Below are positions 41,695 through 55,572 of a stretch of DNA of 64,000 nucleotides, piece by piece. The notes below the pieces were generated by a model that saw only the letters and a program-made list of their open reading frames with translations, had not been told where the DNA came from and made no database searches. A program made the position numbers and the translations under genes. The stretch covers positions 186,001-250,000 of IMG/VR virus record IMGVR_UViG_3300033995_001164. One strand, written 5' to 3'. How positions within the stretch are numbered: position 1 is the stretch's first letter; every line of letters begins with the position of its first letter.

Positions 41695-41767
41695 TGGCCC
41701 CGGAGAATTACGATATCCCGACTTCTACATTATGAGTGTAGCACTCTAACCTCTGAGTTACGAGACC
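41695..41767 (-). tRNA. tRNA-Ile2 (CAT), atypical T-arm
   Basis: GGTCTCG/CGGGGCC-A; CTACA-CTCATAA-TGTAG; T-arm GGGAT-ATCGTAA-TTCTC. Confidence 0.75.
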
Positions 41768-41858
41768 TTAAATTAGGTTTTGGTGTAAACACCCTACACG
41801 ACTTTAACCTAAAAAGTACACTGAGTAATTTAAAACCCTCAGCGGTTTAATTGTTAAC

Positions 41859-42089
41859 CTATTGGTGGTGTTTTATATACCGACCAAACTTATCCACCCT
41901 CACAGAGAGTTTCTCCAATCTAAAGTTCCATTCTTTGAACTTTCCTAAGCCCGATTTTACTCTTGCTTGTTTAATCGCAGATTCTTCTGCCTTCTCACGT
42001 CCGTCTTCTGTTGTTTCAACAAAAAACGTGGGAGCCTGAACACCGTTTCTAACGGGAACTACTCTCCAAATTCTCAATTTCTGAGTCAT
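41859..42089 (-). CDS. Hypothetical protein
   Basis: 76-aa ORF. Confidence 0.5.
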   Translation of the reverse strand: MTQKLRIWRVVPVRNGVQAPTFFVETTEDGREKAEESAIKQARVKSGLGKFKEWNFRLEKLSVRVDKFGRYIKHHQ

Positions 42090-42173
42090 AAATTTTAGCT
42101 AATAGCTAAAACTATGTGGAGTTCGGATTTTGGTTTTTCATATTGATAATTTACACATTTTCTAATTAAAAGA

Positions 42174-42277
42174 AATATTAAACATATGGTGGTCTATCAC
42201 CTCACATTTTCAACGGGTCCAATTTTATGTGTGCCTCACTGGTTTACTTCTGCAATGTCACTTTAATGTTTAATATT
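42174..42277 (-). ncRNA. Candidate structured RNA, 104 nt
   Basis: Perfect 12-bp closing helix AATATTAAACAT/ATGTTTAATATT; internal CACAT/ATGTG and GGTG/CACC helices. Confidence 0.45.
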
Positions 42278-43073
42278 ACTTATTTTGGACAATTTTTATC
42301 ATTTCCATAATCCCATAATTTTTACACCATTTTCTAACCGCATTATCACTAACATTATAATGACGACCAACGGATGTAAATGTCTTGTGTTTCTCAAAAA
42401 TTTCCAATAATTCAGGAACTTTTGGGATTATGTTATTTATTCTTTTTCCTTCATAATAACACTCAATAGAACAATATTTTTTACTTTTTCCAGTATATTC
42501 TCCGTTACAAGTTAAACATTGTTTAATTTCTTTTTCCTTTGGTGGTAATTTAACTAACTCGGCATTTGTTAAATTATTTAACCACTCTATGGATGGTTCT
42601 GATTTTTTTGTTTTTACATTTTTACCTCGATAATTATTAGTCATAGCGTGACAATTAGGGCATAATATTTGTAAATTATTTAATCTATTATCATTTGAAT
42701 CACCATTTATATGATGTAATTCTAATTTAATTGGTTGTTCCATCCATTGTGATAATCCACAACATTCACAGGTTTTAGTTTTTAACCCGTCTTCAATTAA
42801 TCGTTTTCTTAAATTATGACTCCCATAAACAGAACCTTTAATTAATATTTTATCCAAACTCATTGGTGGGATAACTTTTCTATATCTATCACCCTGATTC
42901 CAACCTTGTCCGGTAAAATGGGATGTATCAATATTAAATTCTGTAATTTTATTTCTGAGTGTTTTATAATTTCCACCAGCAGCAATAATCCCTAATTTTT
43001 TACAAACTTCAGATATTGACAACGATTCTTTAATAACTTGTTCTAAACTCTCTTTTGTGTGTTTATATTTCAT
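42276..43073 (-). CDS. HNH homing endonuclease
   Basis: CECCG...LELHHINGDSNDNRLNNLQILCPNCHAMT; HTH-like termini. Confidence 0.9.
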   Translation of the reverse strand: MKYKHTKESLEQVIKESLSISEVCKKLGIIAAGGNYKTLRNKITEFNIDTSHFTGQGWNQGDRYRKVIPPMSLDKILIKGSVYGSHNLRKRLIEDGLKTKTCECCGLSQWMEQPIKLELHHINGDSNDNRLNNLQILCPNCHAMTNNYRGKNVKTKKSEPSIEWLNNLTNAELVKLPPKEKEIKQCLTCNGEYTGKSKKYCSIECYYEGKRINNIIPKVPELLEIFEKHKTFTSVGRHYNVSDNAVRKWCKNYGIMEMIKIVQNK

Positions 43074-43150
43074 AATGTTCCTTTATTATAAATATCTCGA
43101 ACCTACACAAAGTTTAAGTTTTTTAATTATTTTTTACGATTACCTTTTTG

Positions 43151-43235
43151 TACCCGGAGAGGGACTTGAACCCTCAACCCCCTTACGGAGGACTAGATTT
43201 TAAGTCTAGCGTGTATACCATTCCACCACCCGGGT
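43151..43235 (-). tRNA. tRNA-Leu (TAA)
   Basis: CTAGA-CTTAAAA-TCTAG; long variable arm; canonical T-arm. Confidence 0.95.
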
Positions 43236-43240
43236 AGTTG

Positions 43241-43316
43241 TTGATAAGGTGGGTTTCGAACCCACGGACTCTCGGCAGTTACCCACCGAGTGTTTCGCCA
43301 ACAAAACTTCTTACCA
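43241..43316 (-). ncRNA. tRNA-like RNA 1 with GNRA hairpin in place of the anticodon loop
   Basis: TGGTAAG/CTTATCA-A acceptor, GTTT/AAAC D-stem, GTGGG-TTCGAAA-CCCAC T-arm; central CTCGGTGG-GTAA-CTGCCGAG. Confidence 0.7.
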
Positions 43317-43327
43317 ATCCTTCCACC

Positions 43328-43528
43328 AATGAGATTATTTTGGTGTAGATGTCCACAGTTTTTCTATTCAAAACCCATCGCGTCTTACCGCTTAAAAGTC
43401 AACAACTACTCGGAGGGATTGTTGTCAGTTCCCTTTATTCCGACAGACCCCCTCTGTAAAACCGTATGAGGCGTCAGCTACATCATTATTTCGAACGATG
43501 CCAAATCATTGAGTATCTCTATCTCATT
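43328..43528 (-). ncRNA. Candidate structured RNA, 201 nt
   Basis: AATGAGAT/ATCTCATT closing helix and several internal hairpins; no ORF. Confidence 0.45.
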
Positions 43529-43531
43529 TGT

Positions 43532-43619
43532 TGTTAGAACAGGAATCGAACCCGTGCTCTGCCGAAGATACCCCACTTTCGTGAATCGACGACCAAATAC
43601 TACCACTATATCATCTAAC
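43532..43619 (-). ncRNA. tRNA-like RNA 2
   Basis: GTTAGA/TCTAAC-A acceptor, AGTGGTAG D-loop, ACGGG-TTCGATT-CCTGT T-arm; central GTCGA/TCGGC helix bearing TTCAC-GAAA-GTGGG. Confidence 0.6.
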
Positions 43620-43624
43620 AATTG

Positions 43625-43698
43625 AGGTTCCTGTCAGAATCGAACTGACTCTATTCGGGGTTACAAAACCCGTGCACCACCTTTTATGCGTAGGAACC
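43625..43698 (-). tRNA. Atypical tRNA, tentatively Thr (TGT)
   Basis: GGTTCCT/AGGAACC-T; CGGG-TTTTGTAAC-CCCG (U31.C39 mismatch); canonical T-arm. Confidence 0.55.
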
Positions 43699-43751
43699 CT
43701 GTTGCAGAGTATTTTTTTTAAGTAGAAGTCAACTCTGTCTCTTAAACTACT

Positions 43752-43811
43752 AAAAGAAACTGTCCAAGGTCTATCCTGCTTTCGCTGTCCAGATTTTTCT
43801 CTGTTTCTTTT
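43752..43811 (-). ncRNA. Candidate small structured RNA, 60 nt
   Basis: AAAAGAAAC/GTTTCTTTT closing helix; GC-GAAA-GC hairpin; TGGACAG occurs twice. Confidence 0.35.
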
Positions 43812-43812
43812 A

Positions 43813-43905
43813 ACATCATCACTTCGGCCACATTGGGAGAACCGCAGTTCCCACGTTGTTTAAGGAGGTAGTTTGGCGGTGTATCACACCGAGTTATGAT
43901 AATGT
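43813..43905 (-). ncRNA. Candidate structured RNA, 93 nt, with ACCTCCTTA loop
   Basis: 10-bp closing helix with two G.U pairs on the minus strand; CGGTG/CACCG and GGGAAC/GTTCTCC hairpins. Confidence 0.45.
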
Positions 43906-43910
43906 ATTTG

Positions 43911-43984
43911 TACCCCCGGTGAGAGTCGAACTCACAAAACTCTTCATCCTAAGTGAAGCGGCTTTCCCGTTTGCCCACGAGGGT
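43911..43984 (-). tRNA. tRNA-Leu (TAG) without long variable arm
   Basis: CTTCA-CTTAGGA-TGAAG; only 74 nt. Confidence 0.8.
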
Positions 43985-43991
43985 ATTATTG

Positions 43992-44064
43992 TATCCTTAT
44001 CGGGATTCGAACCCAAACGACAAATTTAGAAGATTTGTATGCCAATCCATTACATCATAAGGAC
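43992..44064 (-). tRNA. tRNA-Arg (TCT)
   Basis: CAAAT-CTTCTAA-ATTTG; cloverleaf intact. Confidence 0.9.
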
Positions 44065-44077
44065 GTTTTTTTTTTTG

Positions 44078-44151
44078 AGACGATAGTCGGTCTCGAACCG
44101 ACCTTATTCCACATTGGAAGTGTGGTGCCATACCTACTAGGCGATACCGTC
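44078..44151 (-). tRNA. tRNA-Gly (TCC)
   Basis: CCACA-CTTCCAA-TGTGG; U73. Confidence 0.92.
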
Positions 44152-44230
44152 ATTTTTTGGGTAGATTCAGACTAGTACTGTCTACCGGGACCTCAAGTTT
44201 GAATTTCTTCAGGGAATTGAGACACATTCG

Positions 44231-44302
44231 TAGCAGGTGCTGGATTCGAACCAACGACCTAGAGGTTATGAGCCTCCCGAGCTACCTCTGCTCTAACCTG
44301 CA
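44231..44302 (-). tRNA. Initiator tRNA-fMet (CAT)
   Basis: 1.72 mismatch, GAGC/GCTC D-stem, GGAGG-CTCATAA-CCTCT. Confidence 0.85.
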
Positions 44303-44318
44303 ATTTATTTGTTTTTAG

Positions 44319-44394
44319 TAGCGAAGTACAGGTACCGCCCCTGTCTTATGTCAAGTTTATGAGACTTGCGGAAACTCTATGCCCCCCACTCGCG
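44319..44394 (-). tRNA. Atypical CAT tRNA (fMet-like acceptor, non-canonical T-loop)
   Basis: CGCGAGT acceptor with a bulge and C1.U72; CAAGT-CTCATAA-ACTTG; ACAGG-GGCGGTA-CCTGT. Confidence 0.6.
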
Positions 44395-44410
44395 ATGTAT
44401 TATTTAATTG

Positions 44411-44486
44411 CGGTCCCGGAGGGTTTCGAACCCTCATTTTAGAGCAGTGACAGTGCAATTCCCCTACCAATGGGGCTCACAAGACC
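44411..44486 (-). tRNA. tRNA-Asp (GTC)
   Basis: GCA-CTGTCAC-TGC (weak stem); G73. Confidence 0.85.
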
Positions 44487-44586
44487 AAAATTTTCAATTC
44501 AAAGGTGACTATCCTATAACAATTGAAGGAGAAAGAACCGTGTTTCCCGGGTAGTGACTTCCCGTATTCTGTCTTTCTGTTTTTTG

Positions 44587-44660
44587 TGGAACTGACGGGG
44601 GTCGAACCCGCATACCTTCTCGTTGCAAACGAGCTATTCAGCCAATTGAACTACAGCCCC
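44587..44660 (-). tRNA. tRNA-Ala (TGC)
   Basis: G3.U70 pair; CTCG-TTTGCAA-CGAG. Confidence 0.92.
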
Positions 44661-44724
44661 AATTATTCGTCTTTCCGAATCGTCAACATTGTGTAATTAG
44701 GGGACACGTTGCTCATAACCCTTG

Positions 44725-44796
44725 TACTGCCACGGAGAATCGAACTCCGATTTTATGGATGAAAACCATATATCCTGACCGTTAGATGATGGCAGC
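44725..44796 (-). tRNA. tRNA-Glu (TTC)
   Basis: TATGG-TTTTCAT-CCATA. Confidence 0.92.
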
Positions 44797-44842
44797 TTAT
44801 GAATAACCAATATTTCAATTAACTTGTTTCTTTTTGATGGTA

Positions 44843-44873
44843 CAAAGATAATGCTTTATTTCATTCTACCAAA
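44843..44873 (-). promoter_or_regulatory. Bacteroidota sigma70-type promoter for the tRNA sub-operon
   Basis: Minus strand TTTG-GTAGAATGAAATAAAGCAT-TATCTTTG (19-nt spacer). Confidence 0.75.
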
Positions 44874-45102
44874 CTTTACTCTTCTTTTTTTTCTTCTTCG
44901 ACTAAAACATTTTTTAATCCGTAGGTTACTCCCAATATCGGTGAGTAATCCATAACCAACTCTTCTCTAATCATACCTGTTATTATTATTTTTAGTTATT
45001 GTATCAATATATTTTTTACCTGCGAGTATCAATACCAGTAAACATACCAACAATCCACCCATTATGACCAATATTTGTTCTCCTGTATATTCTTCCATAA
45101 CT

Positions 45103-45345
45103 TTAATTTGATTTTCTCCAATTATTGGTGTTATAAATACAAAATTGTGAACCCACTTGGGCGTTTCTCCAATCATTCGGGTATAGATAAAATAATTTAT
45201 CATCTCCGGTACATTCATTTCTAATTACAACAGAATAATCTCTCACTCTATTACTAATTACTAGCCCACAATTACAACTCACATATCCATCAACAGAACA
45301 AGATAAGAATAGTGGGATGGACATAATTAAAATTAATTTTTTCAT
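45103..45345 (-). CDS. Small putative lipoprotein
   Basis: MKKLILIMSIPLFLSC lipobox-like; promoter at 45363-45394. Confidence 0.6.
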   Translation of the reverse strand: MKKLILIMSIPLFLSCSVDGYVSCNCGLVISNRVRDYSVVIRNECTGDDKLFYLYPNDWRNAQVGSQFCIYNTNNWRKSN

Positions 45346-45599
45346 AATCCTTTTATTTGTTACAAAGGTAATACATTATTTCATTCTACCAAATAAAAAC
45401 AAAAAAAAAATCCACCTTTTTTGAAGATGGATTTTTAAATATTTTTTTTTACTTAAATATATATCATACCATCTCCTTCCAAGTCGTATCTCTACCCTCA
45501 GTTCCCGCTATCGTAAGTAATATGTTTAAAGTTTGCATTTTCTGTGTTATTGTAATTTCTAATAAATATACACCTTTTTATAAAAGTGTCAAGTATTAA

Positions 45600-45986
45600 T
45601 TATTTATTTTCTATAAGTTCATCTAAAACAGCCGGAATGTATTGTTTAAACAATTTAATTGCATTCATTTTAAGTTCAATCATTTCCTTAATATTGTCAG
45701 ATAATTTTTTAATCTTATCGTATTCATCCGGAGTTAATAAGAACACTTCTTTTGGTATAGTGTTATATGTCTTCCCTATAATTGGACTTGTTATTTCAAT
45801 AATATTGGTATCTCCATCGTAATAATACGGTGTTAACCCCTGAGACTTAAATTTAAGTAAACTCATTGGAGTTATATCAAAATCTAATATTTTTCTATTC
45901 TCCGGAAGTTTTGGTTTATCCATCATTTCTTTGTGTTGGTTTAATATATCGTCTTTTTCTTCTTCGGTAATTATAAATTTTCTCAT
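45600..45986 (-). CDS. Leader-bearing protein
   Basis: MRKFIITEEEKDDILNQHK; late-type motif upstream. Confidence 0.6.
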   Translation of the reverse strand: MRKFIITEEEKDDILNQHKEMMDKPKLPENRKILDFDITPMSLLKFKSQGLTPYYYDGDTNIIEITSPIIGKTYNTIPKEVFLLTPDEYDKIKKLSDNIKEMIELKMNAIKLFKQYIPAVLDELIENK

Positions 45987-46127
45987 ACTAATAAATATCT
46001 TAACATAATGAATTACTATTCAAATACATTTTTTTTTAAACCGGTATAGATAATATTGTTTTAACAATTATCGGAAATGGATAATTTCTTCGAGGTGAAG
46101 GTATTTTAATCATAAGTAATATTATTA

Positions 46128-46325
46128 AAAAAGTTTAACAACCCCGCCCTCGGGTCGTAGCGGGCTACATGGGAATTCCGGAATTCGTCGTGTTCGTCAC
46201 CGGCGTACTAGTCCTTATCTATCCTTTACCGTATTACTACGGTGCTACTATTGGGAGGTCACCCCTATCAACACGCTAGTCCATTAATTTTTTAGAGTAT
46301 GGACACCCCGGTTGTTAAACTTTTT
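46128..46325 (-). ncRNA. Candidate structured RNA, 198 nt, GC-rich
   Basis: Perfect 16-bp terminal inverted repeat AAAAAGTTTAACAACC/GGTTGTTAAACTTTTT; internal CCGTA-GTAA-TACGG, GTCCAT/ATGGAC and GTAGC/GCTAC hairpins. Confidence 0.55.
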
Positions 46326-46387
46326 ATTTACATTCACCGTATTTCTACGGCGATTATCGCCGGTATTCACCGTATCGATAAATTTTG

Positions 46388-46528
46388 TGGGTAACAGGGG
46401 ATTCGCACCGAGAGCCTTGACATATCTTTTTTTCTAGAAATATTACAATACATTGTACTCCAATTAACCTTATTCTCTGACACCACCCTCACCGAATGGC
46501 CCGATTCGCTACACCGGAAAGGTTACCC
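46388..46528 (-). ncRNA. tRNA-like RNA 3 (141 nt, weak T-arm)
   Basis: Perfect GGGTAAC/GTTACCC-A acceptor-like helix; GG-TGCGAAT-CC T-loop-like segment. Confidence 0.4.
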
Positions 46529-46536
46529 AAATAATT

Positions 46537-46687
46537 AAAAACAGACAGAATGATTCTCCGATATTTACGTCTTAGGGGACTAGACGGGCATCATACCCGT
46601 GTTTACCCTCGGCGGTCTCTTGGTTTGGTTGATTACTCCGAACCTCACATCCGTATTACCACTGACTTAAGTTATGTGTCTGTTTTT
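46537..46687 (-). ncRNA. Candidate structured RNA, 151 nt
   Basis: 11-bp AAAAACAGACA/TGTCTGTTTTT closing helix; GGGTA/TGCCC and CGTCT/AGACG hairpins. Confidence 0.5.
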
Positions 46688-46688
46688 G

Positions 46689-46855
46689 TGGAATATTTGG
46701 GATTCGAACCCATGCCTCGCACCGTCTGATGCTTGCACATCCTTATGTGCTTTTATCCCTTTTTTTTGTAAAACAACAGACGGCTTTGAAGTACATCCAC
46801 ACCAACAATTATGACCGACTTCACCTTATGTGGAAGTTTAGTTTTACAATATTTC
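46689..46855 (-). ncRNA. tRNA-like RNA 4 (167 nt)
   Basis: GAAATAT/ATATTCC-A acceptor; TGGG-TTCGAAT-CCCA T-arm; 7-bp CCGTCTG/CAGACGG helix enclosing a long insert. Confidence 0.6.
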
Positions 46856-46921
46856 TTCGGGAGAGACCCTCAAGGGGTCACCTAACGGAATTATACCCTT
46901 AAATCACTCTCCGTCTTCTTG

Positions 46922-46992
46922 CACGTTTGATAGGTCTCGAACCCATACAAATTCTTTTGGAGAGAATTATGCTACCATTACATCACAAACGT
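46922..46992 (-). tRNA. tRNA-Trp (CCA)
   Basis: ATTCT-CTCCAAA-AGAAT; G73. Confidence 0.92.
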
Positions 46993-46993
46993 A

Positions 46994-47641
46994 TTATTTT
47001 AACCATTTTCTAATGGCGTTATCACTAACACCATATTTACGACCTGTTCCTTTATACCCAAGATTAATTACATCTTGTTTTATTTGTTCTATGGATGGTC
47101 TCTCAACTTTTCTATTTTGTTTATTTGTACATTTGATACATTTATCACTTTTTTTATCTTTTGTACCACCACACTCACAATGGTATTTAATTTTATTAGA
47201 TTTCCCGGAATATGTGCTAGTTTGGGAGTGACAATTAGGACATAAAAATCTTAAATTTTCTATTCTATTGTCATTATTAACCCCATTAATATGGTCTAAA
47301 TGTAGGCTAATATTTTTACCATTCCATTCCCCATTATTGCCACATTCGACACATTTATACTCAAGTAAATTTTTCTTTAATATTCTATTTTTAATTTTAC
47401 CTCTCGCAAATGTTGAATCTTTAACAAAAACGTCCTCGTCTAATCTAACTTCTTTAGGTCCTGTACCATAATAATTATATTTAGGAATCTCTAAACCCAA
47501 TTTAATAATTCTGTCTTTAATATTTCTATAACCACCCGACCCATTTGGTGATAAATTAAATAATAAAATAACCTCTCTCATTGATTTTGAATTATTTAAT
47601 ATTTCAAATAATTCTTCTTTTGTTACAGTTTTTAAATTCAT
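46994..47641 (-). CDS. HNH homing endonuclease
   Basis: CVECG...LHLDHINGVNNDNRIENLRFLCPNCHSQT; same C-terminal YGVSDNAIRKW as 42276..43073. Confidence 0.9.
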   Translation of the reverse strand: MNLKTVTKEELFEILNNSKSMREVILLFNLSPNGSGGYRNIKDRIIKLGLEIPKYNYYGTGPKEVRLDEDVFVKDSTFARGKIKNRILKKNLLEYKCVECGNNGEWNGKNISLHLDHINGVNNDNRIENLRFLCPNCHSQTSTYSGKSNKIKYHCECGGTKDKKSDKCIKCTNKQNRKVERPSIEQIKQDVINLGYKGTGRKYGVSDNAIRKWLK

Positions 47642-47711
47642 ATACTTTATTTTAATATAAATATCTTAAAAAACTAAAAAGGGTCACCATAACCTATGTT
47701 TCACCAAAAAT

Positions 47712-47872
47712 AATAACATAATTTTTTGTAGTCCCCCGCCGGGTAACCCCCCTACTTTTTCACACAACCCGGATGCCTCCGAATCTAATTTTCTATTTCA
47801 CCTCTTACTAAGAAACGCGTTTTCCATTCAGAGATTCAAGCCGATTTTCGCGAGTTAAAAAACTATGTTATT
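47712..47872 (-). ncRNA. Candidate structured RNA, 161 nt
   Basis: 16-bp closing helix with one G.U pair on the minus strand; CCGGGT/ACCCGG and CGCG/CGCG helices. Confidence 0.5.
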
Positions 47873-47874
47873 TG

Positions 47875-47944
47875 AGGTCTCGGGGGGAATCGAACCCACT
47901 CTATTAGTTTTGCAGACTAACCGGTCGCCACGACCAACAAGACC
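47875..47944 (-). tRNA. tRNA-Cys (GCA)
   Basis: TTAGT-CTGCAAA-ACTAA; U73; short D-arm. Confidence 0.9.
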
Positions 47945-48017
47945 ATTTAACCTACGACCTAAAGAACAGGAATTGTATCCATATCATTCTATGAGCACTG
48001 TAGGTTTTCTATTTTAA

Positions 48018-48089
48018 AAAACACCCGGACTGACCTTTTCTCCCTTGTCTGTACGTGTTATCCGGCCGTGACTACGTAGCGGGTGTTTT
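48018..48089 (-). ncRNA. Candidate small structured RNA, 72 nt
   Basis: AAAACACCC/GGGTGTTTT closing helix and CCGGA/TCCGG. Confidence 0.35.
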
Positions 48090-48254
48090 AATAAATCACA
48101 CATCCATCAAGATTGGGATAATTAGAAGGGCTATTTATTTTCAAACTATTTCATTCCTCCCTAAAACTAACTTACTCAACAAACATAACACTTCTTGTAG
48201 TGTTACATTTTCTAACTTTAACGCTGTTTGTCTTTCTATGTGTAAATTTAATTT

Positions 48255-48641
48255 TTATGTGTCAATTCCAAAAAACTCCTTACCGGTTGATTCTTGTAAT
48301 CCATACATATATTCTTCCGCTTCTTCTTCAGAATCAAAATACGTGCTATGTGATGTCTTATCAGATAAATTAACGGTTATTTGAGATTTTTGTCGAATTT
48401 CTTTAGTTTCTTCATTGATAAGATACCATTTGTATTCACTTAAATATTCCGTAGTTCTTCGGTTTATTCCGGAATTATAATTACTCCACCCTTCAGGTGT
48501 TTCTTCTGTCATACCATACTTAATCCCTAAAAATGTTTTAGGTTTTGATGGTACTTTATCAAACCACTTATAACCTGTTTCTTTTTCCGGTTGGAAACTC
48601 ATTGACGCCACTCTATCTACTTGGAAATAATATCTACCCAT
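48255..48641 (-). CDS. Hypothetical protein
   Basis: 128-aa ORF. Confidence 0.55.
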   Translation of the reverse strand: MGRYYFQVDRVASMSFQPEKETGYKWFDKVPSKPKTFLGIKYGMTEETPEGWSNYNSGINRRTTEYLSEYKWYLINEETKEIRQKSQITVNLSDKTSHSTYFDSEEEAEEYMYGLQESTGKEFFGIDT

Positions 48642-48801
48642 ATTTGTTTATTTAATATCTTCTCTAAAATATGACATCTCAACATTGTATAATTCACAAA
48701 TTCTTTCTGTGGACATTTTGGAGAATAAACTTCCCAAACAATGGATAAAATATCCATCAATAAACCACTTTAATCTTTGTTTTGCTTCGTATTCTGTCAT
48801 C

Positions 48802-49044
48802 TTAATATCCTATTTCATCTTTAATCTTCCATTGTTCATCAATGGGGATTCTTTCAACCCTTTCAACCGGAACAAATCCGTCCAATCTTTTTTCTTTAAC
48901 ATCCTCAAAATGTTCAATGGTGTCCAAATAAAACCCGAACTGATATCGAATGTATTGGAACTTTTCACCATCCCAATATGCCATGTGGTTGTTTCTACAG
49001 AAACCATTATACCACCCTTCAACCATATCTTTTTTTAATATCAT
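48802..49044 (-). CDS. Hypothetical protein
   Basis: 80-aa ORF after host-type promoter (TACCTTTG near 49096-49103). Confidence 0.55.
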   Translation of the reverse strand: MILKKDMVEGWYNGFCRNNHMAYWDGEKFQYIRYQFGFYLDTIEHFEDVKEKRLDGFVPVERVERIPIDEQWKIKDEIGY

Positions 49045-49142
49045 AATTTCTATTTTTAATCCTCTTACACCAAGAGTTAATCTTTAATTTTTTTACAAAG
49101 GTAGGAATAAATTTTTAACCAACCAAATTAAAAATTAGAAAA

Positions 49143-49305
49143 TTATATAGGAAGTTTTACTTTACTTAAAATATTATTTGAAACGTGAGTATAAACTTTC
49201 TAAGAAAGGTTTAACATGCGATAAATAATTATTTCCAGTTTTAGGGGAGTAGTTCAGATATATAAACTTTTCTTCACAAATCTTTATAATTTTTTGGTTT
49301 TTCAT
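49143..49305 (-). pseudogene. Internally deleted tyrosine recombinase (integron-integrase-like)
   Basis: N-terminal MKNQKIIKICEEKFIYLNYSPKTGNNYLSHVKPFLESL (SAM-like YS..T...Y motif) is joined out of frame to C-terminal YTHVSNNILSKVKLPI (catalytic-Tyr motif). Confidence 0.75.
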
Positions 49306-49340
49306 AATATAACTTACTAATAATTAATGTTTTACACAAT

Positions 49341-49369
49341 ATTACATATATAACATAGTTATGTGTAAT
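49341..49369 (+). other. attI-like site
   Basis: GTTATGT core at 49358, just upstream of the integrase start; its flank is complementary to the R'' of the first attC. Confidence 0.55.
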
Positions 49370-49385
49370 AAAATAAAAATTATGA

Positions 49386-49598
49386 TTATCCTATATCACA
49401 TTTGGTTATTAATCCTTTATCAATCTCCAAGTTTATTCTATCAAATCGTAAATCCATTGTGATTACATAATTATTAGAATCTTCTCTTGTTATTCTAACT
49501 TTATAATCATTTTCTTTACATAATTCTGTTCCTGATTCTTTATTCATTCCGATTAAAGATTCTAATAATTCATTACTTCCGTTTCTATTTCGTCCCAT
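49386..49598 (-). CDS. Cassette 1 gene: peptidase-inhibitor I78/potato-inhibitor-like protein
   Basis: VITMDLRFDRINLEIDKGLITKCDIG matches the TMDyr.dR...D...I....G pattern. Confidence 0.6.
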   Translation of the reverse strand: MGRNRNGSNELLESLIGMNKESGTELCKENDYKVRITREDSNNYVITMDLRFDRINLEIDKGLITKCDIG

Positions 49599-49632
49599 AA
49601 TTTTAAATTTGTATAATTTTTATTTTACATAC

Positions 49633-49686
49633 ACATAACAAATGATAAACAACATTAAAACGATTGTTTATCATCGGACGTTATAA
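49633..49686 (+). mobile_element. attC site 1 (54 nt)
   Basis: ACATAAC-AA-ATGATAAAC-loop-GTTTATCAT-CGGAC-GTTATAA. Confidence 0.8.
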
Positions 49687-49701
49687 AACATTAAAACGAT
49701 T

Positions 49702-49831
49702 TTATAACAAAGTATAAAAGAAATGCTCCAAAAGTTCGACATTGGAAATCCTCTGTTACGGAGTTGAACCGCATCTACCTTGCAAGATAGTTGTTACACA
49801 ACCGCACTTCTTTTATACTCAATCGTTATGT
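49702..49831 (+). mobile_element. attC site 2 (130 nt), closing an ORF-less cassette
   Basis: TTATAAC-AA-AGTATAAAAGAA...TTCTTTTATACT-CAATC-GTTATGT. Confidence 0.8.
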
Positions 49832-49846
49832 TTAATTTTAAGAAAT

Positions 49847-50116
49847 TTATTTGTTTTTTAATTTGTCTTGAAGTATTTTGTTTACATCAAATTTAGTCCA
49901 AGAAGTTTGTTCTTCAAGTGGTTTTCGTTCTGTTGGTGGCGTTGGTACATCATCAATAACCATATAGTGACTAAATGTTAAATGAGACAAACTTCTTCCC
50001 ATTTGTCCTTTCAATTTACTTGGAAACATATGACCATTTGTTCTATTTACCCACCAACAAAATAATTCTTCATTTGGTAAATCTTGTTCTGAATTTATCT
50101 CTATCCATTCTTTCAT
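49847..50116 (-). CDS. Cassette 3 gene: DUF551-like hypothetical protein
   Basis: Likely start MKEWIEINSEQDLP; ends with SHYM...PTPP pattern. Confidence 0.5.
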   Translation of the reverse strand: MKEWIEINSEQDLPNEELFCWWVNRTNGHMFPSKLKGQMGRSLSHLTFSHYMVIDDVPTPPTERKPLEEQTSWTKFDVNKILQDKLKNK

Positions 50117-50155
50117 ATAATATATTTTTAAGTTGTATAAATTTTTTAAAACTAA

Positions 50156-50209
50156 ACATAACAAAGTGTAAAAAACATTAAAACAATTTTTTACACCCAA
50201 CCGTTATGT
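50156..50209 (+). mobile_element. attC site 3 (54 nt)
   Basis: ACATAAC-AAA-GTGTAAAAA-loop-TTTTTACAC-CCAACC-GTTATGT; loop nearly identical to attC1. Confidence 0.8.
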
Positions 50210-50226
50210 GTAATAAAAAACTAAAA

Positions 50227-50451
50227 TTAAACTACCTCAACTTTATACAGTGTTCTATTATCGAAGTTTTCTTTTGAAAACCCCTTTATTACATCATTAT
50301 TTTTGTGTGAAATTGTTTCAATGTCATCTATGTTGTTTTTGATGTCATTCAGTGTTTTACTCAATCTACTCCAGTAAATTTGTTCACACAAAAATAAACC
50401 AGTCCATTGTAGGTTTTTCAAAATAAAATCTGTTAATTTAGTTCGTTTCAT
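50227..50451 (-). CDS. Cassette 4 gene: hypothetical protein
   Basis: 74-aa ORF between attC3 and attC4. Confidence 0.55.
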   Translation of the reverse strand: MKRTKLTDFILKNLQWTGLFLCEQIYWSRLSKTLNDIKNNIDDIETISHKNNDVIKGFSKENFDNRTLYKVEVV

Positions 50452-50489
50452 ATATTTAAAAGTTTAATTTTTTTACGTTTTTTACATAC

Positions 50490-50512
50490 ACATAACAAGG
50501 TGTATATGTAAT
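50490..50512 (+). mobile_element. Truncated attC site 4 (left arm only)
   Basis: ACATAAC-AAGGTGTATA with no right arm; same upstream TTTACATACACATAACAA as attC1. Confidence 0.55.
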
Positions 50513-50517
50513 AATTT

Positions 50518-50703
50518 TTACAAAGATACGATTATATTCCTACTCCGGAGTGTTTTTCTTAAAAGAGATAATCTTTTTCTATGATTGACATATTGGTCAC
50601 CATCATTAGCTTTATGTCCTTTAAAAATTGATTCAGTTATCTCACATTCCAATTTAATAATTTCACTTATTAGCTCTTCTGTTGTTAAATCACTCTCAAT
50701 CAT
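50518..50703 (-). CDS. Hypothetical protein
   Basis: Coupled ORF. Confidence 0.5.
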   Translation of the reverse strand: MIESDLTTEELISEIIKLECEITESIFKGHKANDGDQYVNHRKRLSLLRKTLRSRNIIVSL

Positions 50704-51023
50704 ATTTTCTCAAATTCGTCTTCAAATCCGTACCATTCCTCACCTTCTTCATCTTCGTACCAATATGTGTATGCCCGGTCGTATTTATGCCAATCAATTC
50801 TAGTCAATTCAACCTCATTTCCACTATTTTTATCTCTAACCACATTACCAACTTGAAATGCTTGTGGTACGTAATCATTGATTGTTTCACTTTTAATAAT
50901 CAATTCTCCAACACTTTTAACCTCATCAGTTTGGATATTGGTATAGTTTCCTTCGGATGATAATTCCCACCCATTGTCATACAACCAATTCGTAAAATCT
51001 AAAATTTCGTTTTCTAATAACAT
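50700..51023 (-). CDS. Hypothetical protein
   Basis: ORF after a TATCTTTG promoter element near 51046-51053. Confidence 0.55.
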   Translation of the reverse strand: MLLENEILDFTNWLYDNGWELSSEGNYTNIQTDEVKSVGELIIKSETINDYVPQAFQVGNVVRDKNSGNEVELTRIDWHKYDRAYTYWYEDEEGEEWYGFEDEFEKI

Positions 51024-51063
51024 AATATATCAGTTTTTGTGGGGACAAAGATACTACGATTTT

Positions 51064-51339
51064 TTAATCTACCAAATTTTTATCTTTATTTTCCAAATAT
51101 TTTCTTGACTCACTACACATTTTTTCCAAAACCTCTAATGATTTGAGATTCTTAAAGATGATTGTTAGAATTTCCTCACTTTCACCACCTAACACATCAA
51201 CACCAACCTCATTCGGTTCTGACAATGAATCAATCGTAATGAATGGTAATTTAACACTGTTCTCAATTCCCATTCCAAATGATAATTCACCATCTCCGGC
51301 CACAATAACTCTCTCACGTTGTTTTTTTACTTCTGACAT
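51064..51339 (-). CDS. Hypothetical protein
   Basis: 91-aa ORF. Confidence 0.55.
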   Translation of the reverse strand: MSEVKKQRERVIVAGDGELSFGMGIENSVKLPFITIDSLSEPNEVGVDVLGGESEEILTIIFKNLKSLEVLEKMCSESRKYLENKDKNLVD

Positions 51340-51344
51340 AATAT

Positions 51345-52187
51345 TTAATTTTCTGTTTCTAATCTTTTAATAACGTCCTTAATATTAATATATGATGTTA
51401 AAATTGTTGGTAACCCAAGAAGAGCATTACAAAAATCAAACATATATCTATAAGTTGAGAATACACTTCCCACACTCACCTTATTGTACATTACGTAGTA
51501 TGTTAATAATGCTGTCACACTTCCATAAACAATACCTTGAATCCAAATTGAAAACTTAGCATCAATACTTGACATTTTAAGTGATAAGAACTGACCTCTC
51601 TTTAATAAATTATTAATTGAGGCAATTTTTCTTGTACCAATCACATCAGTTTGTTCTTCAGACAAATCATTATATTTACTTGTAATGTTGGCAATTTTTG
51701 GTGAATAATATGCTGTTGCCCCCAAGATTAATATTGTTGTAATAATCAAGAATCCAACAATCGGTAAACTTACCATTGCCAAGAAGTAGATGGCGCCAAC
51801 CAAACCAATAATCGTCTGTATTACCAATAACATATCTCGTTCAAAAAACAGGACAATATAGTGCATTAAGGTTAATCTTCCGTTGATTTTTGTTGTCTCA
51901 ACATCATTATCAAGTTGATTACTTGTTTCAATAGAGGCAAATCTCCTATAAATCCCGGAGAATACTTTAGTGTCATAAATTTTACTGATGTACCCGAAGA
52001 ACATAATTGATGCAAATGTAGAAACCAAATACCATATGTATGAATAATCTTTGGTAATTAAGTGGTCAATTGCATTACCCAAAACTTTGGGATACATAAC
52101 CATCAATATCGCATTAATCATGAACAATGAATATGAAAATATTATTGATTTCCAATTCTCACTAAACATTATTTTTAACTTATCCAT
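51345..52187 (-). CDS. ABC-transporter-type six-helix transmembrane domain, no ATPase
   Basis: Six hydrophobic helices; YPKVLGNAID, YDTKVFSGIY, GSVFSTYRYMFDF patterns. Confidence 0.7.
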   Translation of the reverse strand: MDKLKIMFSENWKSIIFSYSLFMINAILMVMYPKVLGNAIDHLITKDYSYIWYLVSTFASIMFFGYISKIYDTKVFSGIYRRFASIETSNQLDNDVETTKINGRLTLMHYIVLFFERDMLLVIQTIIGLVGAIYFLAMVSLPIVGFLIITTILILGATAYYSPKIANITSKYNDLSEEQTDVIGTRKIASINNLLKRGQFLSLKMSSIDAKFSIWIQGIVYGSVTALLTYYVMYNKVSVGSVFSTYRYMFDFCNALLGLPTILTSYINIKDVIKRLETEN

Positions 52188-52256
52188 ATCTTATCTTTTT
52201 TGATTTTGACAAAGATACAACTAAAATTTAATCTACCAAATAATTATGAATTTTCT

Positions 52257-52484
52257 TTAAATTGTTTTCCAAGTCTTTTTAATGGTTTTTGAAAAGTTAA
52301 CAATTTTTTGACAGTCTTCACAATTTACATTTTCATTTGTTTTTACAAATTGACCACAAGTCATAAAATCCCCATCAAGTGTTAAACCACATAAAGTGTA
52401 ATCACTTCCAACCGGTGATGTAAAATGAATTTCATTTTTGAATATATCATCACCATTACCAATGAATTTTATTTTATTTGACAT
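52257..52484 (-). CDS. Small Cys/His (zinc-finger-like) protein
   Basis: H...CG...C...CEDC spacing. Confidence 0.5.
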   Translation of the reverse strand: MSNKIKFIGNGDDIFKNEIHFTSPVGSDYTLCGLTLDGDFMTCGQFVKTNENVNCEDCQKIVNFSKTIKKTWKTI

Positions 52485-52687
52485 TATTCCTCACTTTTTT
52501 TAGGTCCCTTGAAATCACAATCAAGACAAACGTATCTCTGTTCTTCAATGCTCCAATCCATATTATAATGTTGACATTCCTTAGGTTTTAAATATTTTTG
52601 TTGTTTCTTGTATTCCGACACCACTTTAAGTGCTGTTTTATACTGACTTTCTGTTATCATAGTTAAAAGAATAAGTAGGGTCTCCAT
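52484..52687 (-). CDS. Small zinc-ribbon protein
   Basis: ECQH...YVCLDC. Confidence 0.45.
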   Translation of the reverse strand: METLLILLTMITESQYKTALKVVSEYKKQQKYLKPKECQHYNMDWSIEEQRYVCLDCDFKGPKKSEE

Positions 52688-53172
52688 TCATCAGGGATTT
52701 CGTGATGAACTTGTTTCATTAACATCAAGTAATGAGGTCTCCTTGGTTGAGGAATTTCCTTACCGTATTCCTCCAACGTCAAATTGGACTTCTCACCGTT
52801 ACACCTTCTACAAGCGGTAACTAAGTTGTCCCAACTGTCTTTCCCCCCCTTAGATTGGGGTATTACGTGGTCCAAAGTTAGCGTCTTTCTATTATTGTCT
52901 CCACAATATACACACTCAAAGTTATCTCTACGATAAACATTCTCTCTACTTAAAGGAACTTTTTGAATTATCTGATTCACATATTTGTAGACCCGAATAA
53001 TTGAAGGTTTTTTGATATCCAATTCAGGATTCACTAATTTGAATGATTCCGGATGTTCATTTATAACGTCAGCATTACCCTTATAAGAAATGACGAAAGC
53101 CCTCTCTGTGGAAATAATACTCCTCGCCATAAAACTTGAATCCAAAACCAAAGTTTTTTGGTAACTACTCAC
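52663..53172 (-). CDS. HNH endonuclease (McrA-like)
   Basis: RENVYRRDNFECVYCG...TLDHVIPQSKGGKDSWDNLVTACRRCNGEK. Confidence 0.9.
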   Translation of the reverse strand: MSSYQKTLVLDSSFMARSIISTERAFVISYKGNADVINEHPESFKLVNPELDIKKPSIIRVYKYVNQIIQKVPLSRENVYRRDNFECVYCGDNNRKTLTLDHVIPQSKGGKDSWDNLVTACRRCNGEKSNLTLEEYGKEIPQPRRPHYLMLMKQVHHEIPDEWRPYLFF

Positions 53173-53206
53173 GACTATTAATTTTTAATTAAACATTTTT
53201 TTTTTG

Positions 53207-53277
53207 TTCCCCCAAATGGTACTGGCCCATTTTCCCGATATTAAAAGTATCGTGCTTCACCTTAAAGCTTTAGGGGA
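53207..53277 (-). tRNA. tRNA-Lys (TTT), non-canonical T-loop
   Basis: CGATA-CTTTTAA-TATCG; AATGG-GCCAGTA-CCATT. Confidence 0.8.
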
Positions 53278-53360
53278 TTATTGAGCTCATTTTGTTTTGT
53301 TATTCGGCTCAAAATATAAGTAATTTGAGATTAATAATCAAACTTTATGAGCCACATTTG

Positions 53361-53433
53361 TCGGTCAGGTGGGTATCGAACCCACTACCTTTCGCGTATC
53401 AGGCGAATGCTCTACCGATTGAGCTACTGACCG
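53361..53433 (-). tRNA. tRNA-Ile (GAT)
   Basis: TTCGC-CTGATAC-GCGAA. Confidence 0.95.
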
Positions 53434-53438
53434 AATTG

Positions 53439-53510
53439 TTAGGGTGGAGAGGGTCGAACTCTCCGCTTCCTGCCTCCAATGCAGGCTTCTCACCCCGAGA
53501 ATACACCCTA
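53439..53510 (-). tRNA. tRNA-Pro (TGG)
   Basis: CCTGC-ATTGGAG-GCAGG. Confidence 0.88.
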
Positions 53511-53524
53511 ATATATTTTTTTTG

Positions 53525-53609
53525 TAGAGAATATGGGATTCGAACCCATACCCCCATTTAAGGAGGGACACATTAGCAGTGTGTTCTGATACCGTTACAG
53601 CAATTCTCT
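53525..53609 (-). tRNA. tRNA-Ser (GCT)
   Basis: ACACA-CTGCTAA-TGTGT; long variable arm. Confidence 0.9.
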
Positions 53610-54389: not shown

Positions 54390-54449
54390 TTACTTAATTT
54401 GTTTATTAATAAATATATCAAAAATATTGAAAAGTTCAAGTTTTTTTTG

Positions 54450-54522
54450 TGTCCCCAAGAGGATTCGAACCCCTATTCTATCTGTCGTAAAGATAAGTCC
54501 TTTCCAGTTGAACGATGGAGAC
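54450..54522 (-). tRNA. tRNA-Arg (ACG)
   Basis: TATCT-TTACGAC-AGATA. Confidence 0.9.
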
Positions 54523-54579
54523 AATTTGATGTCTTTCCATCAGTCATCCCTATTATTTGGTAAGGGTGGAACATCCTTG

Positions 54580-54722
54580 TGGTCAGGACAGGTCTCGAAC
54601 CTGTACGATTGAAAAGACCAATTTTACTCGGTTCTTCGGGATGGTCAACATATTTAATGTGATGTCTCACGGCCCGATTAATCAATCACCCATTACGCGT
54701 CTACCAATTCCGCCACCTGACC
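54580..54722 (-). ncRNA. tRNA-like RNA 5 (143 nt, Leu-type D-arm)
   Basis: GGTCAGG/CCTGACC-A; TGGCGGAATTGGTAGACGC; ACAGG-TTCGAGA-CCTGT; about 90-nt insert with no 7-nt anticodon loop. Confidence 0.75.
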
Positions 54723-54726
54723 AATT

Positions 54727-54825: not shown

Positions 54826-54829
54826 TTCG

Positions 54830-54967: not shown

Positions 54968-54969
54968 TT

Positions 54970-55072: not shown

Positions 55073-55086
55073 TTACCATTACTGAT

Positions 55087-55208: not shown

Positions 55209-55224
55209 TAATATTTACCAATTT

Positions 55225-55557: not shown

Positions 55558-55572
55558 ATGTACTTTATTTTG

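What the first reader, a model, noticed from the sequence alone, without database searches (positions are those of the whole stretch)
46388..46855. Two long tRNA mimics flanking a 151-nt stem-closed RNA
A 141-nt acceptor-ended RNA, a 151-nt element closed by an 11-bp helix and a 167-nt mimic (7-bp CCGTCTG/CAGACGG pseudo-anticodon helix) are packed with gaps of under 10 nt. This repeats the mimic-RNA-mimic layout at 43241-43619 and 54580-55072. Inference: mimics may act as processing punctuation that releases passenger RNAs.
Basis: partly seen in the sequence, partly recalled or inferred. Interest (0 to 1): 0.6.

Follow-up and report, generated by a model that had tools for sequence, protein, structure and literature searches.

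The report
RNA gene cassettes in phage tRNA-array
This stretch of an uncultured aquatic giant phage holds four separate small structured-RNA genes, two of them tRNA-shaped but unable to decode, rather than two long tRNA mimics built around a passenger; they are new RNA families of unknown role that recall phage T4's unexplained small RNAs C and D.

Summary
All elements are on the minus strand, inside the tRNA array of a 309-kb T4-like jumbo phage. The sequence features are real, but the layout is not a conserved unit.

In 20 or more related contigs the interval splits into four cassettes that occur independently:
- **E3a** (46855..46763): a stem-closed hairpin.
- **E3b** (46759..46689): a 71-nt cloverleaf with a 6-nt "anticodon" loop and G3·U70/A73.
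- **E2** (46687..46537): a ~150-nt multi-helix RNA with strong covariation.
- **E1** (46528..46388): a 141-nt RNA with tRNA-like ends.

Each occurs without the other, and covariation supports E3b's own anticodon stem, not the CCGTCTG/CAGACGG helix.

E2 is the constant part. Only 2 of 20 distinct copies have tRNA-like elements on both sides, and 11 have neither E1 nor E3b next to them.

E1 and E3b share the C74-A-A 3' trailer found on most genuine tRNAs in the array, so tRNA-type end processing is plausible. Obligatory "punctuation" is not supported.

None matches Rfam or T4 rnaC/rnaD. Metatranscriptome contigs cover the modules. Function is unknown.

The parts
46921..46992 (-). tRNA-Trp(CCA), a genuine tRNA that heads this block (context).
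   Evidence: ARAGORN. Rfam tRNA 57.7 bits. It lies directly upstream of 'up' in relatives L009/L012.
46856..46920 (-). 'up': a conserved 65-nt hairpin element directly after tRNA-Trp. The variable cassettes are inserted 3' of it.
   Evidence: 78-98% identical in 15 or more loci. MFE -21 kcal/mol, z -1.8. In L009/L008/L012 it abuts the 'down' RNA directly.
46763..46855 (-). E3a: a ~90-nt cassette closed by UUGUAAAAC (46849..46841) pairing with GUUUUACAA (46774..46766). It contains CCGUCUG (46783..46777).
   Evidence: It is absent between 'up' and E3b in L014 and in an RNA-library contig of run X5. It is present without E3b in L035/L045/L048. It is 100% identical (88/88) in loci whose E2 is only 89-93% identical. 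Its predicted fold is weak on its own, z -0.97.
46689..46759 (-). E3b: a 71-nt non-decoding tRNA-like RNA. It has an acceptor stem with G3·U70 and A73, a D arm with GG, a 5-position anticodon stem (A·G on top) with a 6-nt loop CAGACG (46728..46723), and a canonical T arm (UUCGAAU).
   Evidence: Rfam tRNA 22.8 bits, below the threshold of 29; not called by ARAGORN. Cloverleaf on 5 homologues: 100% paired, 5 pairs with compensatory changes, 0/500 shuffles. MFE is the cloverleaf, z -3.08. G3·U70 occurs otherwise only in tRNA-Ala and the 43240 element.
46537..46687 (-). E2: a ~150-nt multi-helix RNA and the constant core of the block. It has an 11-bp closing helix, the long-range helix GGAUG/CAUUC, inner helices and a variable hairpin.
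   Evidence: 20 distinct homologues. 98.4% of cells paired, 10 pairs with compensatory changes, 0/500 shuffles, slid controls 37-56% paired. G·U pairs fit only the minus strand. Single copy in the genome. No Rfam match.
46388..46528 (-). E1: a 141-nt RNA with tRNA-like ends. It has a 7-bp terminal helix plus A73, two 5' hairpins, a ~65-nt highly conserved middle, and a T-loop-like GGUGCGAAUCC next to the 3' strand of the terminal helix.
   Evidence: 8 homologues, 7 distinct, 89-97% identical. The terminal helix and hairpin 2 covary, 3 pairs, 1/500 shuffles. The T-like arm is invariant, so untested. No tRNA call by ARAGORN with or without introns, or by Rfam at E<=10. It occurs apart from E2, after tRNA-Pro, in G005.
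46330..46387 (-). An optional 58-nt spacer cassette with two hairpins; one is capped by GAAA, the other contains an inner hairpin with a GAAU loop.
   Evidence: z -4.35. Present or absent independently of E1. It is homologous to the sequence after tRNA-Cys in L006.
46115..46329 (-). 'down': a conserved ~215-nt structured RNA closed by a 16-bp helix (AAAAAGUUUAACAACC/GGUUGUUAAACUUUUU). It ends the RNA block upstream of a 128-aa ORF (context).
   Evidence: 15 distinct homologues, with GNRA-capped hairpins gained or lost. No Rfam match at E<=10.

Best explanation
**What it is.** The interval is part of the minus-strand tRNA/ncRNA operon of an uncultured aquatic T4-like jumbo phage. It holds four separately inherited RNA-gene cassettes in a row (E3a, E3b, E2, E1), inserted between a conserved hairpin ('up', after tRNA-Trp) and a conserved 215-nt RNA ('down').

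**What is shown**
- The cassettes are independent.
- E2 and E3b have covariation-supported folds on the minus strand.
- E1's terminal helix and one of its hairpins covary.
- E3b is a cloverleaf that cannot decode normally: it has a 6-nt loop, no U33, and scores below the Rfam threshold.
- Each cassette is closed by pairing of its own ends.

**What is inferred**
- The block is transcribed together with the tRNAs.
- E3b and E1 are cut by RNase P at the 5' end. At the 3' end they are trimmed and given CCA like the neighbouring tRNAs, because they share the N73-C-A-A trailer.
- Those cuts incidentally free the neighbours. E2, E3a and 'down' owe their stability to their own terminal helices, not to flanking mimics.
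- E3b (G3·U70, A73) is probably alanylated. It would act away from normal decoding, for example as a decoy or substrate for tRNA-binding host or phage factors.
- Cassette gain and loss is probably driven by recombination linked to the homing endonucleases scattered through the array, as with SegB in T4.
For: **Genome context**
- 309-kb virus record, tRNA array on the minus strand, tmRNA present.
- gp23-like capsid protein.
- HNH endonuclease ORFs among the tRNAs.

**Modularity**
- Eight different cassette orders are seen in relatives.
- RNA-library contigs of relatives that lack E3a or E1 join exactly at cassette borders.

**Folds**
- E2, E3b, E1.

**Purifying selection**
- In the same loci the RNA modules are 84-100% identical, while the adjacent ORF is 71-83% identical at the nucleotide level.

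**Shared end signature**
- C74 follows all 31 tRNAs and tRNA-like elements.
- CAA follows 20 of 25 tRNAs and also E1, E3b and three other tRNA-likes. It is invariant in the E1 and E3b homologues.

**Expression**
- Short contigs from metatranscriptomes of three studies lie on E1, E2, E3 and 'up'. None lies on the neighbouring ORF at 45618-45925.

**T4 precedent**
- T4 has tRNA-Arg, rnaD (119 nt) and rnaC (139 nt) with 1-6-nt gaps, and segB among its tRNAs (PMC2988022).
- The functions of RNAs C and D are still unknown (PMC9697503).
Against: - No RNA ends were mapped. Contigs cannot show ends, strand or processing, and RNA libraries can carry DNA.
- E1's T-like arm has only 2 contiguous Watson-Crick pairs unless a 5-nt bulge is allowed, and it never varies, so its tRNA likeness rests on few features.
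- In this genome the composite E3 fold (-42 kcal/mol) is slightly more stable than E3a plus E3b folded apart (-16.7 and -22.4 kcal/mol).
- A complement of the specific 6-nt loop arises in only 0.55% of shuffles, so a local E3a-E3b interaction cannot be excluded.
- Alanylation and any decoy role are inferences from identity rules and were not tested.
- The homologue sets are small (5-8 sequences) for E3b and E1.
Confidence: 0.65

Rival explanations
1. One reading: two long tRNA mimics are purpose-built processing punctuation, and RNase P/Z cleavage at them releases a passenger RNA (a mimic-RNA-mimic unit).
For: In this genome and in L097, E2 is flanked by E3b and E1 with gaps of 1-8 nt. E3b's trailer is E2's P1 5' strand. 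Both share the tRNA-type CAA trailer. Similar layouts lie at 43240-43620 and 54579-54967.
Against: Only 2 of 20 distinct E2 copies have both flanks, and 11 have neither E1 nor E3b beside them. The 167-nt 'mimic' is two cassettes that occur apart. The mimics at the three loci are unrelated. E2 closes its own ends with a conserved helix.
Confidence: 0.15
2. These are decaying tRNA pseudogenes and junk spacers, left behind by homing-endonuclease traffic, with no RNA-level function.
For: The array is full of HNH ORFs. Cassettes come and go. E3b and E1 fail tRNA detectors. A deviant tRNA-Lys also exists in the array.
Against: Compensatory changes keep the helices in E2, E3b and E1. The modules are far more conserved than the adjacent protein gene. 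RNA-library contigs cover them.
Confidence: 0.1
3. E3a is a cis- or trans-acting partner of E3b. Its CCGUCUG pairs with the CAGACG loop and masks or remodels the tRNA-like RNA, acting as a switch.
For: The complement to that exact 6-nt loop is rare in shuffles (0.55%). The composite fold is the MFE in this genome. E3a is 100% conserved.
Against: The choice of the loop is post hoc. Any 7-bp complement occurs in 23% of shuffles. E3a exists in a complete 322-kb genome with no E3b (best hits 27-30 bits, against 107 bits for the true copy). E3b exists without E3a in L014, L047 and L100.
Confidence: 0.07

Closest known systems
Phage T4 small stable RNAs C and D (species 1 and 2 RNAs) in the T4 tRNA gene cluster
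   Same: Both are in T4-like phages. The RNAs are 119-139 nt (here 141 and ~150 nt), lie at the end of a tRNA run on the tRNA strand, and are separated by only 1-6 nt, with a homing endonuclease among the tRNAs. T4 rnaC ends in a canonical T arm (CCGGG-UUCGAAU-CCCGG) followed by a short helix with the 5' end, like E1. Function is unknown in both cases (PMC9697503).
   Different: No detectable homology: the E1 and E2 covariance models give only noise on T4 rnaC/rnaD. This array holds many more such modules, they are shuffled between relatives, and it includes a true cloverleaf with a 6-nt loop.
tRNA punctuation and tRNA-like processing signals (mitochondrial punctuation model; MALAT1 mascRNA). 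Recalled from the literature, not tested here.
   Same: tRNA-shaped elements inside a polycistronic transcript would recruit RNase P and 3' processing and so define the ends of their neighbours. E3b's trailer is E2's first helix strand.
   Different: Here the flanking tRNA-likes are dispensable for the neighbour and are themselves conserved, covarying RNAs, so they look like products rather than mere signals.
tRNA-like domains charged with alanine through G3·U70 (tRNA-Ala, tmRNA). The AlaRS identity rule is recalled from the literature.
   Same: E3b has G1-C72, G2-C71, G3·U70 and A73 in all five homologues. So does the 43240 element, whose anticodon arm is replaced by a GUAA-capped helix.
   Different: There is no mRNA-like domain. 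Charging is untested. The phage has a separate tmRNA at 32102-32514.
Phage tRNAs with altered anticodon loops that evade host anticodon nucleases (PMC10264068)
   Same: These are phage-encoded tRNA-shaped RNAs whose anticodon loops depart from the host norm. The genome also encodes an Rnl1-like RNA ligase.
   Different: Those are still decoding tRNAs with 7-nt loops. E3b, with its 6-nt loop, and E1 are not.

Membership tests
Canonical tRNA (Rfam RF00005 / ARAGORN) | Score at or above the family threshold (29 bits), or an ARAGORN call | tested here: not met
   E3b scores 22.8 bits. E1 has no hit at E<=10. ARAGORN, with or without introns, calls neither.
Canonical tRNA (Rfam RF00005 / ARAGORN) | 7-bp acceptor stem, unpaired N73, and a T arm stacked on it | tested here: met
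   E3b has 6 pairs plus A·A, A73, and a 4-bp T stem (plus an A·A mismatch) with a UUCGAAU loop. E1 has 7 pairs and A73. E1's T arm is only T-loop-like, so for E1 this feature is inconclusive.
Canonical tRNA (Rfam RF00005 / ARAGORN) | 7-nt anticodon loop with U33 | tested here: not met
   The E3b loop is YAGACG, 6 nt, in all 5 homologues. The E1 hairpin loops vary in length and sequence.
Intron-containing tRNA (group I or other) | A recognisable intron inserted in an otherwise complete tRNA | tested here: not met
   No group I or group II intron match in 41-58 kb at E<=1. ARAGORN -i 0-400 finds none in this interval. The extra 90 nt (E3a) lies outside E3b, not inside it.
T4 rnaC / rnaD | Sequence or structure homology to the T4 RNAs | tested here: not met
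   Models R1 and R3 give at most 5 bits on rnaC/rnaD.
T4 rnaC / rnaD | A small non-tRNA RNA at the end of a tRNA run, on the same strand, with few-nt gaps, in a T4-like phage | tested here: met
tRNA-punctuated processing unit (mimic-RNA-mimic) | Flanking tRNA-like elements conserved together with the released RNA | tested here: not met
   Only 2 of 20 distinct E2 copies have both flanks.
tRNA-punctuated processing unit (mimic-RNA-mimic) | Cleavage at the mimic boundaries | not testable with these tools
   Only Logan contigs of RNA runs were available, with no ends or strand.
Miniature inverted-repeat mobile element (considered for E3a and E2) | Many copies per genome with terminal inverted repeats | tested here: not met
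   Terminal inverted repeats exist, but each module is single-copy in the 309-kb genome. G·U pairs and compensatory changes point to RNA-level selection.
Rfam IMES-3 RNA motif | Score at or above 55 bits | tested here: not met
   17.8 bits, E 0.69, with many non-canonical pairs, over 'up' plus E3a.

The most novel reading that the evidence does not exclude
Aquatic T4-like jumbo phages carry a toolkit of non-decoding, tRNA-shaped RNAs alongside new structured RNAs. The tRNA-shaped ones include E3b and the 43240 element, which have alanine identity elements but a 6-nt loop or a GNRA-capped helix in place of an anticodon. The new structured RNAs are E2 and 'down'. On this reading the tRNA-shaped RNAs are charged or bound by host tRNA enzymes and serve as decoys or sponges against tRNA-targeting defences, or as non-ribosomal aminoacyl donors. 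This would finally suggest a role for the T4 RNA C/D class.
Probability: 0.15. Interest if true: 0.75.

Novelty: new variant of a known kind. Interest (0 to 1): 0.45.

Why it matters
Phage tRNA clusters have been known for 50 years to carry extra small stable RNAs, T4 RNAs C and D, whose function nobody knows.

- This locus shows that a clade of environmental T4-like jumbo phages has a much richer, modular set of such RNAs.
- At least two are new covariation-supported families, E2 and the E3b tRNA-like. A third conserved structured RNA, 'down', has only three compensatory pairs.
- One tRNA-like RNA keeps alanine identity marks but has lost a normal anticodon loop.
- Natural presence/absence variants give ready-made genetic contrasts for testing what these RNAs do and how they are cut out.
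- The result also corrects the tempting reading that tRNA mimics are there to punctuate passengers.

Tried and rejected
- **One long tRNA with an intron:** ARAGORN with introns of 0-400 nt and Rfam give no call for E1 or the 167-nt element.
- **Group I/II introns or known ribozymes:** no Rfam hit in 41-58 kb at E<=1, or in 45990-46920 at E<=10.
- **IMES-3:** 17.8 bits against a threshold of 55, treated as chance.
- **Paralogy among the modules:** local alignments are no better than shuffles. The E2 model finds no second copy in the genome. The E1 model finds no relative among the other long tRNA-likes.
- **Homology to T4 rnaC/rnaD:** none.
- **Relatives among 50,697 deposited phage genomes:** no blastn match for 46000-47200.
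- **Coding potential:** only 41-59-aa ORFs overlap the interval, and homologues differ by 1-2-nt indels and swapped hairpins.
- **Sigma-70 promoters:** not enriched. TATAAATA is absent from the block.
- **E2's U-run as a terminator:** the U's pair with the A-run of its closing helix.
- **PHROG/NCBIfam annotation of the flanking 128-aa ORF:** nothing found.
- **Rnl2 family in the genome:** no hit, and the control genomes gave none either, so this is uninformative.

Full report
**Context**

The window is bases 186001-250000 of a 309,177-bp virus record rated complete. It encodes a gp23-like major head protein, a portal protein and a large terminase. The best cultured relatives of the capsid protein, at about 42% identity, are Flavobacterium and Microcystis myoviruses, and thousands of T4-like phages follow. 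The phage is therefore an uncultured, distant T4-like jumbo phage.

Between about 41.7 and 56.7 kb the minus strand carries 23 ARAGORN tRNAs and further Rfam tRNAs. Among the Rfam-only calls are Val(UAC), a CAU tRNA and Thr(UGU). Several HNH endonuclease ORFs are interspersed. A tmRNA gene lies at 32102-32514. The finding must therefore be read on the minus strand.

**Checking the observation**

On the minus strand the interval reads as follows.
- E3 (46855..46689).
- A single C.
- E2, closed by AAAAACAGACA/UGUCUGUUUUU (46687..46677 with 46547..46537).
- Eight A/U bases.
- E1 (46528..46388), with a perfect 7-bp GGGUAAC/GUUACCC terminal helix, an unpaired A, and GGUGCGAAUCC next to the 3' strand.

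CCGTCTG (46783..46777) and CAGACGG (46728..46722) are complementary. The raw features are therefore present. ARAGORN finds no tRNA here, even when introns of 0-400 nt are allowed. Rfam gives only a sub-threshold tRNA hit (22.8 bits) on the last 71 nt of E3.

**Comparative anatomy**

Relatives were fetched three ways: through the neighbouring 128-aa ORF, through exact motifs in viral contigs, and through metagenome contigs. BLAST of the parts against these loci shows that the interval is a chain of independent cassettes.

The orders seen are:

| Order | Loci |
|---|---|
| Trp-up-down | L008, L009, L012 |
| up-E2-down | L043, L044, L060, L082/86, L095 |
| up-E2-spacer-down | L090 |
| E3a-E2-spacer-down | L045/54/65, L048 |
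| up-E3b-E2-...-down | L047, L100 |
| up-E2-E1-(spacer)-down | L036/87, L038, L040 |
| E3a-E2-E1-spacer-down | L035/52 |
| Full window order | L097 only, plus identical copies |

In G005, 'up' is followed directly by E3b, and E1 sits 5 kb away behind tRNA-Pro. RNA-library contigs of relatives join exactly at cassette borders, for example 46759 to 46851, which skips E3a.

So E2 is the constant element. Of 20 distinct E2 copies, 2 have tRNA-like elements on both sides, 5 have E1 only, 2 have E3b only, and 11 have neither beside them.

**The '167-nt mimic'**

It is E3a plus E3b.

- E3b alone folds as a cloverleaf. This is the MFE, with z -3.08.
- On five homologues every proposed pair is kept. 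Five pairs show compensatory changes: acceptor 6-67, three anticodon-stem pairs and one T-stem pair. No shuffle in 500 reaches this, and slid controls are 14-58% paired.
- E3a occurs without E3b in a complete 322-kb genome. There the E3b model finds only ordinary tRNAs at 27-30 bits, against 107 bits for the true copy.
- A 7-bp complement between segments of this size appears in 23% of shuffles. A complement of that particular loop appears in only 0.55%, but the choice of loop is post hoc.
- In this genome the composite fold is marginally more stable: -42 kcal/mol against -39.1 kcal/mol for the two parts summed.

A local E3a-E3b contact therefore stays a minor rival, but it is not a conserved unit.

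**E3b in detail**

It has G1-C72, G2-C71, G3·U70 and A73 in all five homologues. Among the 25 genuine tRNAs of the array, only tRNA-Ala has G3·U70. The 43240 element, whose anticodon arm is an 8-bp helix capped by GUAA, also has it.

By the established AlaRS identity rule (recalled from the literature, not tested here), E3b should be chargeable with alanine. With a 6-nt loop, no U33 and A8, it is unlikely to decode normally.

**E2**

Twenty distinct sequences were aligned. The tested structure has these parts:
- a closing helix;
- a long-range helix, GGAUG/CAUUC, which becomes AGGGG/CCUCAU in eight sequences;
- helices GGUU.GG/CC.AACC, CCGA/UCGG and GGG/CCC;
- a variable hairpin.

98.4% of cells are paired, 10 pairs have compensatory changes, 0/500 shuffles reach this, and slid controls give 37-56%. 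Many G·U pairs would be C·A on the other strand, so the selection acts on the minus-strand RNA.

A possible pseudoknot, CUUA/UAAG becoming CUUG/CAAG, is less clean at 88.8% paired. E2 is single-copy in the genome, has no Rfam family, and has no match in 50,697 deposited phage genomes.

**E1**

Eight homologues (7 distinct), 89-97% identical, were aligned. The terminal helix shows C-G to U-A and U-A to U·G. The second hairpin covaries, giving 3 pairs in all and 1/500 shuffles. The T-like arm never varies and needs a 5-nt bulge to make five pairs, so it remains untested.

The overall order is terminal helix, two hairpins, a long conserved insert, then a T-loop-like hairpin. This is tRNA-shaped, but no detector calls it a tRNA. 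The E1 model does not recognise the other long tRNA-likes of the window. The three 'repeats' of the layout are therefore analogous, not homologous.

**Selection and expression**

Within the same loci the RNA modules are 84-100% identical to the window, while the adjacent ORF is 71-83% identical at the nucleotide level. E3a is 100% identical over 88 nt in loci whose E2 differs by 7-11%. This suggests either very strong constraint or recent transfer.

Metatranscriptome contigs from marine, freshwater and aquatic runs (three studies) lie on E1, E2, E3b/E3a and 'up', and on the non-tRNA RNA at 43286-43491. No contig lies on the ORF at 45618-45925. This is consistent with abundant stable RNAs. However, contigs give no ends or strand, and DNA carry-over cannot be excluded.

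**How it probably works**

Every tRNA and tRNA-like element in the array is followed by C at position 74. The trailer reads C-A-A after 20 of 25 tRNAs and after E1, E3b and three other tRNA-likes. It is invariant in the E1 and E3b homologues. CCA is never encoded in full.

From this I infer the following.
- E1 and E3b pass through the same maturation as the tRNAs: RNase P at the 5' end, then trimming and CCA addition at the 3' end.
- E3b's trailer, CAAAAA, is the start of E2's closing helix, so that step would also set E2's 5' end.
- Because E2, E3a, the spacer and 'down' each close their own ends, and E2 thrives without tRNA-like neighbours, the mimics are best seen as RNA products in their own right that share the tRNA processing route.
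- Cassette turnover fits the homing-endonuclease-rich setting. T4's SegB sits among the T4 tRNA genes and drives preferential inheritance of that region (PMC2988022).

**Comparison with known systems**

The closest known case is the T4 tRNA cluster. There tRNA-Arg is followed, after gaps of 1 and 6 nt, by rnaD (119 nt) and rnaC (139 nt). T4 rnaC ends in a canonical T arm. Both RNAs are still of unknown function (PMC9697503). The E1 and E2 models do not match them, so the likeness is in kind, not in family.

The genome also encodes an Rnl1-like RNA ligase outside the window. This fits the tRNA damage-and-repair arms race described for phage tRNAs (PMC10264068), but a decoy role here is only a hypothesis.

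**Verdict**

The locus is a modular set of new small structured RNAs in a phage tRNA operon. It is a new variant of the T4 RNA C/D theme, of moderate interest and with its function open.

Noticed in passing
window 46115-46329 (-): 'down': a ~215-nt RNA closed by a 16-bp helix and very conserved in 15 distinct relatives. GNRA-capped hairpins (GUAA/GAAA) are gained or lost. It has no Rfam family and sits just upstream of a 128-aa ORF of unknown function.
   Followed up: partly
window 43240-43316 (-): A tRNA-like RNA whose anticodon arm is an 8-bp helix capped by a GUAA tetraloop, with G3·U70 and A73 like E3b. ARAGORN reports it as tRNA-??? (gtaa).
   Followed up: partly
window 43240-43620 (-), compared with L009:7533-7702: The whole tRNA-like / 213-nt RNA / tRNA-like block between tRNA-Thr and tRNA-Leu(UAA) is missing in L009, where Thr and Leu are 5 nt apart. 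This second 'mimic-RNA-mimic' block is therefore also an optional cassette. RNA-library contigs are deepest on 43286-43491.
   Followed up: partly
window ~53203-53275 (-): A deviant tRNA-Lys(UUU) at the position syntenic with relatives' tRNA-Lys. It has a normal anticodon loop (CUUUUAA) but a non-canonical T loop, and both ARAGORN and Rfam miss it.
   Followed up: partly
tRNA array, window 41695-56709 (-): No tRNA encodes CCA. All have C74, and 20 of 25 read C-A-A after the discriminator. This is a shared 3' trailer signature that implies trimming plus CCA addition.
   Followed up: yes
window 32102-32514 (+): A phage-encoded tmRNA gene (Rfam RF00023, 50.6 bits, full length).
   Followed up: no
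window 16751-19567 (-): The 938-aa portal protein ORF carries an HNH endonuclease-like segment at about residues 194-282, ahead of the portal domain.
   Followed up: no
window 42276-43073, 46994-47641, 52663-53172, 53595-54389 (-): Four HNH homing-endonuclease-like ORFs are scattered among the tRNA genes. The one at 46994-47641 is 92% identical in L048 but only about 68% identical elsewhere.
   Followed up: partly
L047:2500-2870 (-) and L100:3662-3746 (-): The same insertion hot spot holds other cargo in relatives. L047 has a small ORF between E2 and 'down' whose N-terminus resembles that of the 128-aa ORF. L100 has a different ~80-nt tRNA-like element in the E3a slot.
   Followed up: no
G000:C1:255134-255724 (outside the window): A T4 Rnl1-like RNA ligase relative (TIGR02308, E 7.7e-22, below the curated cut-off) in a 415-aa ORF.
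   Followed up: no
window 7283, 14359, 19596, 41535, 43087, 47656, 62714 (+): TATAAATA on the plus strand, which reads TATTTATA in gene orientation, lies about 12-20 nt upstream of the start codons of several minus-strand genes. Overall the motif is not significantly enriched (19 found against 12 expected).
   Followed up: no
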